From contig OZ287753.1 in the NCBI GenBank assembly GCA_965649765.1, forward strand, positions 69,068,001-69,132,000: a DNA stretch of 64,000 nt, given 5' to 3'. Shown piece after piece: positions 6,101 through 7,708 of this stretch. Positions within the stretch are counted from its first letter, which is position 1; every line of letters starts with the position of its first letter. Source of the DNA: Bispira polyomma (lineage: Eukaryota). The translations under genes and the position numbers were made by a program. The notes below the pieces were generated by a model. It saw only the letters and a program-made list of their open reading frames with translations, made no database searches and was not told the DNA's origin.

Positions 6101-7708
6101 ATGACATTGATATGATGCAGGCAGTGCAGTGCAATATGGGACTGTTTGGCATTATTTACGACATGCACCTCGAAGTATTGGAAAAGAAGATTGCGCATGT
6201 ACATGATGACTTTAATTACAATGGTGATTTGTTTTATGATGCCAAGCGGTTAAAGGAGTTGGTCACGAAAAATGATTCCGTTGAAGTTTTTCATTTCCCA
6301 TTCAACAGTGTAGGCTGGATTGATGCAGCTGAACAGCTGACGAGGATCATTGGTACAAACCAAACTCTCACGAGGGACGAATGGGATCCAAAAAAAGATC
6401 AGCTCTATATCCGCCGCATAAACTTTCACGAACCTAAGGATGTTGCAGATAAAGAAGTATCTTCAGATTCATATTACAATGCCATGGATGTTCGTACCTG
6501 GCTAGAAGCACATAGCGTAAATGTCATTGATAATTTATTGATAAGTTTTCCTCAGGAAATAACACCCCTTGTACAAAAGGCTAGTCACAGCTACCTGAGG
6601 GAATCAACGGCTGGAATACGGTGGCAACCACTGCCTAATGCAATCCACTACAGGCCTAACATAGAACTTTACGCAGTCCATGACATGGAAGTGGCAATCA
6701 ATGCAAAAGATGACTTCAGTAATGTCACCATTGCTTGTCAGACAATCTTGGAGCTTTTGCGACAAGAGGCTGAGAATGCCAGGTTCCCAATAAATATAGC
6801 CATGGAGATGAGGTGGATGAAGTATAGCGAGGCATACCTGTGCCCAGCTATAGTTGGAAACCCGAAAGAAGGCGGATCAGGTCACACATTCTATATTGAA
6901 ATTCTTAGCTATGCCCAAACACCACATTGGGAAGAATTTTCTAGCAAGGTGGCCAACGAATTGATTAAAAAAGTGTCAGGAATACAGTTCCACTGGGCAA
7001 AAGAATGGGATTATATAGATGGTGTAGACCAGCATATTAAAAAGGTATGTTTTAATACATAGTCAATTTACCTAAAACTGTTCATTCCAATATTCAATGT
7101 TATGTTATATTTAAGACGTTTTGAATATAGATGCTAATAGAAATTTTATATTCTTAAAATGTATATTGAAATATGTATATTGTATATTCTTAAAATAGAA
7201 ATATGTGTATTGTTGATGATGATACAAATACAAATGTTTTGAACTGGTGTTGCATAAAGAACTTATAACATTGAATATACTGTTTCTACTTTATTTCTAG
7301 CTATTTTGTCCAACATCTCGTTTTGTAAAAAAAAGTACATAATTCATAAGGATGACACACTTATAATTTAAAGTTTGTAATTTTTGAAGGTATGTTTTCT
7401 TATCGCTTTGCTTTTGCATGAAATGTGGATGTAGATACTTGTTTTTATACTTGATAATTTTGTGTAATCCACAGATCATGGCAAAGCAGATAAAGAAATT
7501 CCGGTCTGCCCTTGATCGATCTGGATGTGATCCCAATGGTATATTCCTCAATGACAAGCTACAACATCTCTTTTTTCCTGAACGACAGAGCTATGATGAG
7601 AATGCCAATGACCAAAGTAAAGGCAGTGGAAATAACGATGGGGTACAACAAAATGCTGTGAAAGGTGAACAACCTCCCAAAAAGTCTTCCACTTGTAATG
7701 TACTTTGA
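1..7708 (+). CDS. FAD-linked aldonolactone oxidase-like protein (GULO/ALO family), copy 1; join(<1..172,3626..3748,4111..4260,6007..7044,7475..7708)
   Basis: Five exons with GT..AG boundaries, all phase 0, splicing into one open frame. Motifs: FENWA, RIRCAGARHSWSP (covalent-FAD His), TYGGIVSLGCHGVG, MEMR, HWAKEW, DPNGIFLN. The ATG lies 8 nt upstream of the window by comparison with copy 2. Confidence 0.9.
2690..3060 (-). mobile_element. Degenerate Crypton-like (DUF3504-associated tyrosine recombinase) fragment in intron 1
   Basis: Minus strand reads KRNVNTKMKTN...FQKW and PEVLDTYLGHYLLQ*RKRDGTEYE, resembling the N.NT..KT / RK.DG.EYEP motifs of Crypton/ZMYM-type proteins; broken frame. Confidence 0.55.
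3626..3748 (+). CDS. Copy 1 exon 2 (FAD-binding His motif)
   Basis: ttttacag|LRIRCAGARHSWSPMFPDEGHILMFNQGIQRHDGPRIELLQ|gtaact; 123 bp; conserved at 38102-38224; not in the ORF track. Confidence 0.9.
4111..4260 (+). CDS. Copy 1 exon 3
   Basis: taccag|NKDGSHKVNVMSGVSVEELMDFELKNDVSLACNVILTTSTYGGIVSLGCH|gtaagt; 150 bp. Confidence 0.9.
5430..5875. repeat. ~146-bp tandem repeat (about 3 copies) inside a ~1.2-kb insertion in copy 1 intron 3
   Basis: aaatgtctgctatctc recurs at 5571 and 5717; repeated gccatcttgaattt-like motif; block absent from copy 2 intron 3 (526 vs 1746 bp). Confidence 0.7.
6007..7044 (+). CDS. Copy 1 exon 4 (substrate-binding/ALO domain)
   Basis: ttacag|GVGWDCMG...HWAKEWDYIDGVDQHIKK|gtatgt; 1038 bp within ORF 5809..7062. 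Confidence 0.92.
7475..7708 (+). CDS. Copy 1 exon 5 (DPNGIFLN plus CaaX tail)
   Basis: ccacag|IMAKQIKKFRSALDRSGCDPNGIFLND...KKSSTCNVL*. Confidence 0.9.
   Translation: MMAKQIKKFRSALDRSGCDPNGIFLNDKLQHLFFPERQSYDENANDQSKGSGNNDGVQQNAVKGEQPPKKSSTCNVL

What the first reader, a model, noticed from the sequence alone, without database searches (positions are those of the whole stretch)
7590..7708. Lactone-oxidase-like enzyme ending in a conserved CaaX prenylation box
Seen: after the normal family terminus (DPNGIFLN...LFF) both copies carry a ~40-aa polar, low-complexity linker ending PPKKSSTCNVL*. The linker differs at 7 positions between copies, while the last 13 aa are identical. Known: Cys-a-a-Leu at a C-terminus with upstream lysines is a typical geranylgeranyl-transferase I signal (Rho/Rac-like). 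The characterised aldonolactone oxidoreductases I know (GULO, ALO1, GALDH) are not prenylated. Inference: a lipid-anchored flavo-oxidoreductase on the cytosolic face of membranes, possibly a local redox/H2O2 source. This is the strongest host-gene candidate for an undescribed system here.
Basis: partly seen in the sequence, partly recalled or inferred. Interest (0 to 1): 0.85.

Follow-up and report, generated by a model that had tools for sequence, protein, structure and literature searches.

The report
CaaX-tailed lactone-oxidase-like flavoenzyme gene cluster
A tandem family of invertebrate flavoenzyme genes related to the vitamin-C-forming lactone oxidases carries a C-terminal lipid-attachment (prenylation) signal that selection has kept across paralogues and across two species, so the enzymes are probably tethered to the cytosolic face of membranes, which has not been described for this enzyme family.

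Summary
Copies 1 and 2 of a five-exon FAD_binding_4/ALO gene both end ...EQPPKKSSTCNVL-stop. The roughly 40-residue polar linker differs at 7 positions and the last 13 residues are identical.

The same genome and a deeply diverged relative (synonymous sites saturated) carry five more tails of this kind, ending CNVL (a pseudogene), CSLL, CTVL, CALM and CVIM. In all of them the Cys sits exactly four residues from the stop, a2 is V/L/I and X is L or M. Ser, Cys, Leu and Pro codons change synonymously, and the 3'UTR directly after the stop cannot be aligned. Paralogues that gained an early stop show the motif decaying (Cys to Gly in one).

The exon products have no signal peptide and no transmembrane-like stretch. 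The genome holds prenyltransferase beta-type loci and an ICMT gene.

A selected CaaX signal is therefore well supported in silico. Lipidation itself and the transcripts are untested, because no RNA runs were available.

The "H2O2 source" idea is not supported. The covalent-FAD His and the Glu/Arg substrate pair are present, but the oxygen-gatekeeper position is Val, not the Gly of GULO and ALO, which hints at a dehydrogenase.

Verdict: a new variant of known kinds, of moderate interest.

The parts
1..172 (+). Copy 1, exon 1. It is cut by the window start, about 10 nt after the ATG. It encodes the N-terminus and the start of the FAD-binding domain.
   Evidence: 96% identical to copy 2 exon 1. 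tblastn hit to the bivalve homologue P0015. Donor GGG|gtgagt at 172/173.
3626..3748 (+). Copy 1, exon 2. It carries the RCAGARHSWSP motif with the His at the covalent-FAD position.
   Evidence: His is conserved in 18 of 20 family members. The His/Leu distinction comes from PMC11099136.
4111..4260 (+). Copy 1, exon 3. It carries ...CNVILTTSTYGG...GCH, with Val at the oxygen-gatekeeper position (8 residues before GG).
6007..7044 (+). Copy 1, exon 4 (346 codons). It covers the end of the FAD domain and the ALO cap domain, with the EMR substrate-binding Glu/Arg pair.
   Evidence: Pfam ALO 25.1 bits against a cut-off of 23.1. 37% identity to bivalve 'L-gulonolactone oxidase-like' proteins. dN/dS 0.08 against copy 2.
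7475..7708 (+). Copy 1, exon 5. It holds the family C-terminal motif (7475-7582), the polar linker (7583-7693), the CaaX box CNVL (7694-7705) and the stop (7706-7708).
33240..33419 (+). Copy 2, exon 1. It starts at ATG 33240 (MGDLKAV...). The product is hydrophilic and has no signal peptide. An in-frame stop lies 30 nt upstream.
38102..38224 (+). Copy 2, exon 2.
38673..38822 (+). Copy 2, exon 3.
39349..40386 (+). Copy 2, exon 4 (ALO domain).
45514..45747 (+). Copy 2, exon 5, with the linker and the CaaX box CNVL (45733-45744), then the stop. Intron 4 is about 5.1 kb here, against 430 nt in copy 1.
63485..63670 (+). Copy 3 (pseudogene), exon 1. The rest of the gene lies beyond the window end.
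   Evidence: tblastn. Searches show a stop in exon 3 and a frameshift in exon 4. Searches show the tail ending ...PPKKTSVCNVL-stop.

Best explanation
The window holds two intact tandem copies, and the start of a third, dead copy, of a five-exon gene of about 574 codons. It encodes a cytosolic VAO-type flavoenzyme with FAD_binding_4 plus ALO domains, a distant relative of the aldonolactone oxidoreductases GalDH, GULO and ALO.

After the family's normal C-terminus, the protein carries a disordered polar linker ending in a basic, Ser-rich stretch and a canonical CaaX box (PKKSS[ST]-C-x-[VL]-L). The most likely mechanism has four steps. CaaX prenyltransferase (GGTase-I for the -L boxes; FTase, or both enzymes, for the CALM/CVIM paralogue) attaches an isoprenoid to the Cys. 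The aaX residues are then probably removed (a2 = V/L/I suits Rce1). The new C-terminus is methylated by ICMT. The otherwise soluble enzyme is then tethered to the cytosolic face of membranes through a roughly 40-residue leash.

Shown here: the motif, its selective conservation, the absence of other membrane or secretion signals, and the presence of the machinery genes. Inferred: the lipidation itself, the membrane location, the substrate and the electron acceptor.

Because the gatekeeper residue is Val rather than Gly, the enzyme may pass electrons to a membrane-associated acceptor rather than to O2. Within the tandem array, paralogues with -L boxes, -M boxes and no tail probably differ mainly in where they sit.
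For: The motif and its exact duplication are shown.

Seven tails in two species keep Cys at -4, a2 = V/L/I and X = L/M. They end CNVL x3, CSLL, CTVL, CALM and CVIM.

Codon-level turnover points to selection on the protein. Ser codons vary (TCT/TCC/TCA/AGC), as do Cys (TGT/TGC), Leu (CTT/CTA/CTG) and Pro, and the stop codon switches between TGA and TAA. The sequence directly after the stop is unalignable.

Synonymous sites between the species are saturated. dN/dS is 0.08 for copy 1 against copy 2 in exon 4 and 0.17 in exon 5.

The exon-4 tree places the CaaX genes in both the basal clade (CALM/CVIM orthologues) and the derived clade. The tails share K[KQ]SSxC, so the tail is probably ancestral to the cluster.

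Where an early stop appeared, the motif decays. L025 keeps EPKKSSS followed by Gly instead of Cys. Own copy 0 keeps ...KNCLP-stop behind three stops.

No 19-residue stretch has mean hydropathy above 1.2, and the N-terminus is hydrophilic.

Three prenyltransferase-beta-type loci and one ICMT locus are present in the genome.

The literature agrees with the motif. The canonical GGTase-I profile is Cx[V/I/L][L/F/I/M/V], and CTVL was validated by gel shift in yeast (PMC11304957). GGT1 substrates favour Ser/Lys at -1 and lysines at -1 to -7, with a hydrophilic 11-residue linker (PMC1175975).

Family assignment: a profile of homologues hits GalDH at E = 4e-59, and the Glu/Arg pair and His align.

Membrane association is already typical of the family, with unknown determinants in GULO (PMC11099136).
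Against: There is no direct evidence of lipidation. No RNA run was available: the three runs that hold the locus are DNA, with even depth over the introns. Use of the terminal exon and expression are therefore inferred from conservation alone.

a1 is polar (N/S/T) in the -L boxes. This is tolerated by known substrates, but CNVL itself was not found among validated sequences.

Half of the paralogues (7 of 14) lack the tail, so it is dispensable for at least some functions. One tail-bearing copy is a pseudogene.

More distant homologues, in bivalves, sponge and bacteria, end without any tail.
Confidence: 0.7

Rival explanations
1. The conserved C-terminal K-x-S-S-x-C-x-hydrophobic-L/M end is translated and selected, but for a purpose other than prenylation. 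Candidates are S-acylation alone, a protein-interaction (PDZ-type) ligand, a redox-active or metal-binding Cys, or a degradation signal.
For: No lipidation data exist. Two tails (CSLL, CTVL) would also fit a class-I PDZ ligand ([ST]-x-hydrophobic).
Against: The only invariant features are exactly those of a CaaX box: Cys at -4, a2 aliphatic, X = L/M and a hydrophilic Lys/Ser linker. The -2 position varies (N, S, T, A, V), which does not fit any single PDZ class. S-acylation usually needs prior membrane affinity, and the protein has none.
Confidence: 0.15
2. The tail is not part of the mature protein. In this reading the real transcript uses another 3' exon or an internal donor after ...FFPE, and the open frame to CNVL is 3'UTR.
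For: There is no RNA evidence. Many homologues and seven paralogues end right after FFPE.
Against: Untranslated sequence would not keep an open frame, a Cys exactly four codons from the stop, and synonymous-only change across species whose synonymous sites are saturated. The sequence just after the stop is unalignable. In paralogues that do stop early, the region decays.
Confidence: 0.07
3. The identity of the ends is a by-product of recent duplication or gene conversion within the tandem array, and the CaaX look is chance.
For: Copies 1 and 2 are recent duplicates (96% identical in exon 4), and the last 36 nt are identical.
Against: The motif is also kept in the divergent paralogue (59% identity in exon 4) with different residues (CALM). 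It is kept in three genes of another species as well (CSLL, CTVL, CVIM). Copy 3 differs from copy 1 by three synonymous changes and a TGA-to-TAA change within the block.
Confidence: 0.03

Closest known systems
[quoted passage not shown]
   Same: Same two-domain architecture, FAD_binding_4 plus ALO. The family profile hits GalDH structures at E = 4e-59. The Glu-x-Arg substrate pair is conserved. His is present at the covalent-FAD position, as in GULO and ALO. Membrane association is typical of the family.
   Different: Only about 25-30% related. Exon 4 alone barely passes the ALO cut-off (25.1 against 23.1 bits). The gatekeeper is Val, not Gly (oxidases) or Ala (GalDH), and the His-plus-bulky-gatekeeper combination is not the Gly/His or Ala/Leu pairing described. 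It has a C-terminal linker plus CaaX box that none of the characterised enzymes has. The substrate is unknown.
Bivalve 'L-gulonolactone oxidase-like' / FAD-binding PCMH-type proteins (e.g. Mytilus edulis XP_071128649.1, Tegillarca granosa KAJ8311690.1, Sinanodonta woodiana KAL3888026.1)
   Same: These are the closest annotated homologues, at 36-37% identity over exon 4. They share the domain order and the C-terminal DPxGxFxN...LF motif.
   Different: They end right after that motif, with no linker and no CaaX. Two predicted models instead start MGCGASS and MGCTTSS, which look like N-myristoylation/palmitoylation signals. That would be another route to a lipid anchor. These are automated gene models and are untested.
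CaaX proteins with a basic or Ser-rich hypervariable region (Rho/Rac/Rap GTPases, G-gamma subunits, K-Ras4B with CVIM)
   Same: The C-terminal architecture is shared: a flexible hydrophilic linker, Lys/Ser just upstream, Cys-a-a-[L/M], and a stop directly after X.
   Different: The cargo is a roughly 530-residue flavoenzyme, not a GTPase. There are only two lysines, so the polybasic second signal is weak.
Lipid-anchored oxidoreductases (from my own knowledge, not tested here): prenylated ALDH3B1; N-myristoylated flavoproteins FSP1/AIFM2 and NADH-cytochrome b5 reductase
   Same: The concept is the same: a soluble redox enzyme is brought to the cytosolic membrane face by a lipid modification so that it can act on membrane-associated substrates or acceptors.
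   Different: These are unrelated folds and families. No VAO/ALO-family member is known to me to be prenylated, and a full-text search found none.

Membership tests
Aldonolactone oxidoreductase / ALO-domain VAO flavoenzymes | FAD_binding_4 (PF01565) N-terminal domain | tested here: inconclusive
Exon 1 alone gives only E = 0.0078 and 16.4 bits, below the cut-off, because the domain is split over exons 1-4. Exons 1-3 align to homologues that pass PF01565.
Aldonolactone oxidoreductase / ALO-domain VAO flavoenzymes | ALO (PF04030) C-terminal domain | tested here: met
   Copy 1 scores 25.1 bits and copy 2 scores 26.5 bits against a cut-off of 23.1, on exon 4 alone. Full-length homologues score 33-61 bits.
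Aldonolactone oxidoreductase / ALO-domain VAO flavoenzymes | Glu-x-Arg substrate-binding pair (GalDH Glu386/Arg388) | tested here: met
   The window's ...AMEMRW... aligns with GalDH ...IEQRW... through the family profile. The role of the residues comes from PMC11099136.
Aldonolactone oxidoreductase / ALO-domain VAO flavoenzymes | His for the covalent 8-alpha-N1-histidyl FAD link (GULO/ALO), or Leu (GalDH) | tested here: met
   The His in ...GARHSWSP... aligns with the Leu of GalDH ...GSGLSPNG.... His is present in 18 of 20 family members. Covalent attachment itself was not tested.
Aldonolactone oxidases (O2-reactive: GULO, ALO) | Gly at the flavin N5-C4a gatekeeper position (GalDH Ala113) | tested here: not met
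   The window has Val, 8 residues before the GG of ...YGG...GCHG, in an ungapped alignment. The rule comes from PMC11099136. I therefore do not file it as an oxidase. A dehydrogenase-like reaction is the better guess.
Aldonolactone oxidoreductases | Activity on an aldono-1,4-lactone | not testable with these tools
   Needs an enzyme assay.
CaaX-prenylated proteins | Cys exactly four residues from the C-terminus, a2 aliphatic, X directing FTase or GGTase-I | tested here: met
   The boxes are CNVL, CNVL, CNVL, CSLL, CTVL, CALM and CVIM. They fit Cx[VIL][LFIMV].
CaaX-prenylated proteins | Flexible, small or hydrophilic linker about 11 residues upstream, with Ser/Lys enrichment for GGT1 | tested here: met
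   Positions -1 to -7 read T-S-S-K-K-P-P. The whole 42-residue tail is polar, with 5 K/R and 6 D/E and no hydrophobic cluster. The criterion comes from PMC1175975. PrePS itself was not available.
CaaX-prenylated proteins | Cytosolic exposure (no signal peptide, no lumenal topology) | tested here: met
   The N-terminus MGDLKAVCRQLQ... is hydrophilic. The maximum 19-residue hydropathy in any exon product is 1.19. An unseen upstream exon cannot be fully excluded, because a possible acceptor lies just before the ATG.
CaaX-prenylated proteins | Evolutionary conservation of the motif among orthologues | tested here: met
   Decay after loss of translation is shown.
CaaX-prenylated proteins | Host encodes the CaaX prenyltransferases and the processing enzymes | tested here: met
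   Three PF00432 loci (C2:13.59 Mb, C2:62.14 Mb, C9:19.84 Mb) and one ICMT locus (C2:50.61 Mb) were found. I did not resolve which locus is the FTase, GGTase-I or RabGGT beta subunit. Rce1 was not searched.
CaaX-prenylated proteins | Isoprenoid actually attached to the Cys | not testable with these tools
   Needs labelling or mass spectrometry.

The most novel reading that the evidence does not exclude
This little-studied branch of the ALO/VAO flavoenzymes may be a family of cytosolic dehydrogenases whose working place is set by interchangeable lipid or charge anchors. The variants seen are geranylgeranyl-type CaaX, farnesyl-type CaaX, no tail (soluble), and polybasic tails (own C9/C10 paralogues). 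Two bivalves have N-terminal Met-Gly-Cys acylation signals, and an amoebozoan transcript ends in an independently acquired CKCTIM. On this reading, tandem duplicates in this lineage have sub-functionalised by membrane address rather than by chemistry, and they deliver electrons to a membrane acceptor rather than to O2.
Probability: 0.3. Interest if true: 0.65.

Novelty: new variant of a known kind. Interest (0 to 1): 0.5.

Why it matters
Aldonolactone oxidoreductases are membrane-associated in animals, fungi and plants, yet the determinants of that association are unclear for GULO (PMC11099136). This would be the first case in the family where the membrane anchor can be read from the sequence and can be switched by one residue (Cys to Ser).

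The array also offers a natural experiment. Closely related paralogues carry geranylgeranyl-type boxes, farnesyl-type boxes or no anchor. The enzyme branch itself is uncharacterised, with unknown substrate and acceptor, and is present in lophotrochozoans, a sponge and amoebozoans. Its covalent-His plus bulky-gatekeeper combination is unusual.

The finding adds one metabolic enzyme class to the list of prenylated proteins. It does not reveal a new kind of system.

Tried and rejected
- **RNA evidence.** The look-up of sequencing runs listed no RNA holder. The three runs that hold the locus have even depth over introns and no 7044-7475 joint, so they are DNA. Splicing and expression remain untested.
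- **Last exon as a protein query.** No candidates were found.
- **Second exon-4 search.** A search with the CALM paralogue found no further close species.
- **A third species.** For P0013 (L038) the 2-kb contig ends before the last exon. CaaX evidence therefore rests on two related species plus one independent amoebozoan case.
- **PF04030 search of the own genome.** The six-frame search found nothing, not even the window's own copies. It is too insensitive to say whether a canonical GULO exists.
- **Earlier findings near this place.** None were returned.
- **Exon 4 alone against PDB sequences.** This gave only E = 0.4 to GLDH. A profile of full-length homologues was needed.
- **N-myristoylation of the window's own product.** I rejected this. 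MGD... violates the G-{EDRKHPFYW} rule, which I state from my own knowledge of PROSITE PS00008 and applied.
- **PDZ-ligand reading.** I rejected this because the -2 position is not conserved.
- **Joined model.** Exons were handled one by one by reference. For that reason no structure prediction of the whole enzyme was made.

Full report
**What is at the coordinates.** The window is G000:C6:69068001-69132000 of a 1.035-Gb eukaryotic assembly. Positions 7590-7708 lie in the last exon of a five-exon gene. All introns are GT-AG and phase 0.
- Copy 1: exons 1-172 (cut by the window start), 3626-3748, 4111-4260, 6007-7044 and 7475-7708.
- Copy 2, about 33-38 kb downstream: exons 33240-33419, 38102-38224, 38673-38822, 39349-40386 and 45514-45747.
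- By exon lengths the product has 60+41+50+346+77 = 574 residues.

Every search used single exons by reference.

**The observation.** Exon 5 encodes the family's usual C-terminal motif (...FRSALDRSGCDPNGIFLNDKLQHLFFPE). About 41 polar residues follow, ending PPKKSSTCNVL-stop. The 36-nt end is present exactly twice in the window, against 0 expected. Copies 1 and 2 differ at 7 linker residues, and their last 13 residues are identical.

**Is the end selected or accidental?**

*Other copies in the same genome.*
- Copy 3 ends PPKKTSVCNVL. It is a pseudogene, with a stop in exon 3 and a frameshift in exon 4.
- A convergent minus-strand paralogue, copy 4, is 59% identical in exon 4 and ends ...AKQSSRCALM.
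- An upstream copy 0 ends early (...LDKSG-stop).
- Two distant paralogues on C9 and C10 end in polybasic runs without Cys.

*A related organism (ENA assembly ERZ22147071).* It has at least nine exon-4 copies.
- Three tails end ...SPKKSSTCSLL, ...EPKKSSSCTVL and ...IKQSSSCVIM.
- Six copies stop right after FFPE.

*Divergence and codon pattern.*
- Synonymous divergence between the two organisms is saturated. Exon-4 dN is 0.08-0.16.
- Copy 1 against copy 2 gives dN/dS of 0.08 in exon 4 and 0.17 in exon 5.
- Across all seven tails the Cys sits exactly four codons before the stop, a2 is V/L/I and X is L or M.
- Ser, Cys, Leu and Pro codons and the stop codon itself vary. The DNA directly after the stop is unalignable.

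*Tree and decay.*
- The exon-4 tree puts CALM and CVIM as orthologues in the basal clade. The -L boxes fall in a derived clade that also contains tail-less genes.
- In tail-less L025, the region behind the new stop still reads EPKKSSS, followed by Gly in place of Cys.
- Copy 0 keeps a degraded ...KNCLP-stop behind three stops.

This is the pattern expected of a translated, selected CaaX box that is ancestral to the cluster and has been lost several times.

**Compatibility with prenylation.**
- No exon product has a transmembrane-like stretch (maximum 19-residue hydropathy 1.19), and the N-terminus is hydrophilic.
- The genome has three prenyltransferase-beta-type loci and an ICMT gene.
- Yeast GGTase-I's canonical profile is Cx[V/I/L][L/F/I/M/V], and CTVL was validated experimentally (PMC11304957).
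- GGT1 substrates favour Ser/Lys at -1, lysines at -1 to -7 and a hydrophilic 11-residue linker (PMC1175975). The tails match this profile.
- CVIM is the K-Ras4B box. CALM and CVIM point to farnesylation or cross-prenylation, so the cluster holds two anchor types.

**What the enzyme is.**
- Exon 4 passes Pfam ALO only narrowly.
- An exhaustive search found a small family (356 representatives at E <= 0.001). After the related organism's copies, the next relatives are at 36-37% identity: bivalves annotated 'L-gulonolactone oxidase-like', a sponge, and unnamed Logan contigs. These carry FAD_binding_4 plus ALO.
- A profile of 20 homologues hits GalDH structures at E = 4e-59, then xylitol oxidase and cholesterol oxidase.
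- The window genes keep the Glu-x-Arg substrate pair (EMR) and the His at the covalent-FAD position.
- The residue aligned with GalDH Ala113 is Val. Ala113 is the N5-C4a gatekeeper, and GULO and ALO have Gly there (PMC11099136).
- On that rule the enzyme should react poorly with O2. This is an inference of modest confidence.

**Context in the family.**
- Among 75 database homologues of 400 residues or more, only one has Cys at -4. It is a Soliformovum (Amoebozoa) transcript ending CKCTIM, an independent case.
- The bivalve homologues lack the tail. Two predicted models start MGCGASS and MGCTTSS, which look like N-terminal acylation signals.
- This suggests lipid anchoring may recur in the family. 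These are automated models and the signals are untested.
- An earlier, unchecked note of this scan calls the genome an annelid. I did not verify that.

**What is missing.** No RNA data were available. The runs holding the locus are DNA. They show no variant in the last exon. Lipidation, location, substrate and acceptor all need experiments.

**Verdict.** The CaaX interpretation is well supported by comparative evidence, at about 0.7. The oxidase/H2O2 part is not supported. I found no report of a prenylated aldonolactone-oxidoreductase-family enzyme. Both components are well known, so this is a new variant of known kinds and of moderate interest.

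Noticed in passing
window 4949-5753 (intron 3 of copy 1): A very high-copy repeat. Summed contig depth reaches 24,000-82,000 in run X3, against about 100 on the flanks, with many joints and loose ends. It is probably a short interspersed or satellite-like element.
   Followed up: no
window 21369-22310 (-), 26538-27080 (+), 55238-55933 (+): ORFs with reverse-transcriptase (RVT_1) matches lie between the gene copies. 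These are retroelement remains in the intergenic regions. Neighbouring long ORFs (23792-24943, 25459-26538, 27962-28840) have no Pfam match.
   Followed up: partly
window 40387-45513 versus 7045-7474: Intron 4 is about 5.1 kb in copy 2 but 430 nt in copy 1, so copy 2 has gained inserted sequence since the duplication.
   Followed up: no
window 63485-63670, continuing to G000:C6:69147232: Copy 3 is a pseudogene, with an in-frame stop in exon 3 and a frameshift in exon 4. It still has an intact CNVL tail. It lies tail-to-tail with the minus-strand CALM paralogue. The same convergent arrangement is seen in the relative's contig L024 (CTVL and CVIM genes), so the cluster layout predates the species split.
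   Followed up: partly
P0015 (Mytilus edulis XP_071128649.1) and P0166 (Tegillarca granosa KAJ8311690.1), N-termini: Two bivalve homologues are predicted to start Met-Gly-Cys-x-x-Ser-Ser, a motif typical of N-myristoylation plus palmitoylation, ahead of N-terminal extensions of about 100 residues that are unrelated to each other.
   Followed up: partly
P0025 (Soliformovum irregulare transcript, EukProt): A distant family member (about 32% identity) from an amoebozoan carries its own C-terminal extension ending CKCTIM. This appears to be an independent acquisition of a CaaX box and is seen in a transcriptome.
   Followed up: partly
L006 (G000:C10:35.50 Mb) and L007 (G000:C9:57.13 Mb): Distant multi-intron paralogues end in polybasic runs (...KRKSGKK...KKRKSGKRK) without Cys. 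The C10 copy has in-frame stops and may be dead.
   Followed up: partly
window 4111-4260 (exon 3), and the family alignment A2: The oxygen-gatekeeper position is Val or Thr in most family members but Gly in a few (P0049, P0127, P0137). The family may therefore contain both dehydrogenase-like and oxidase-like members.
   Followed up: partly
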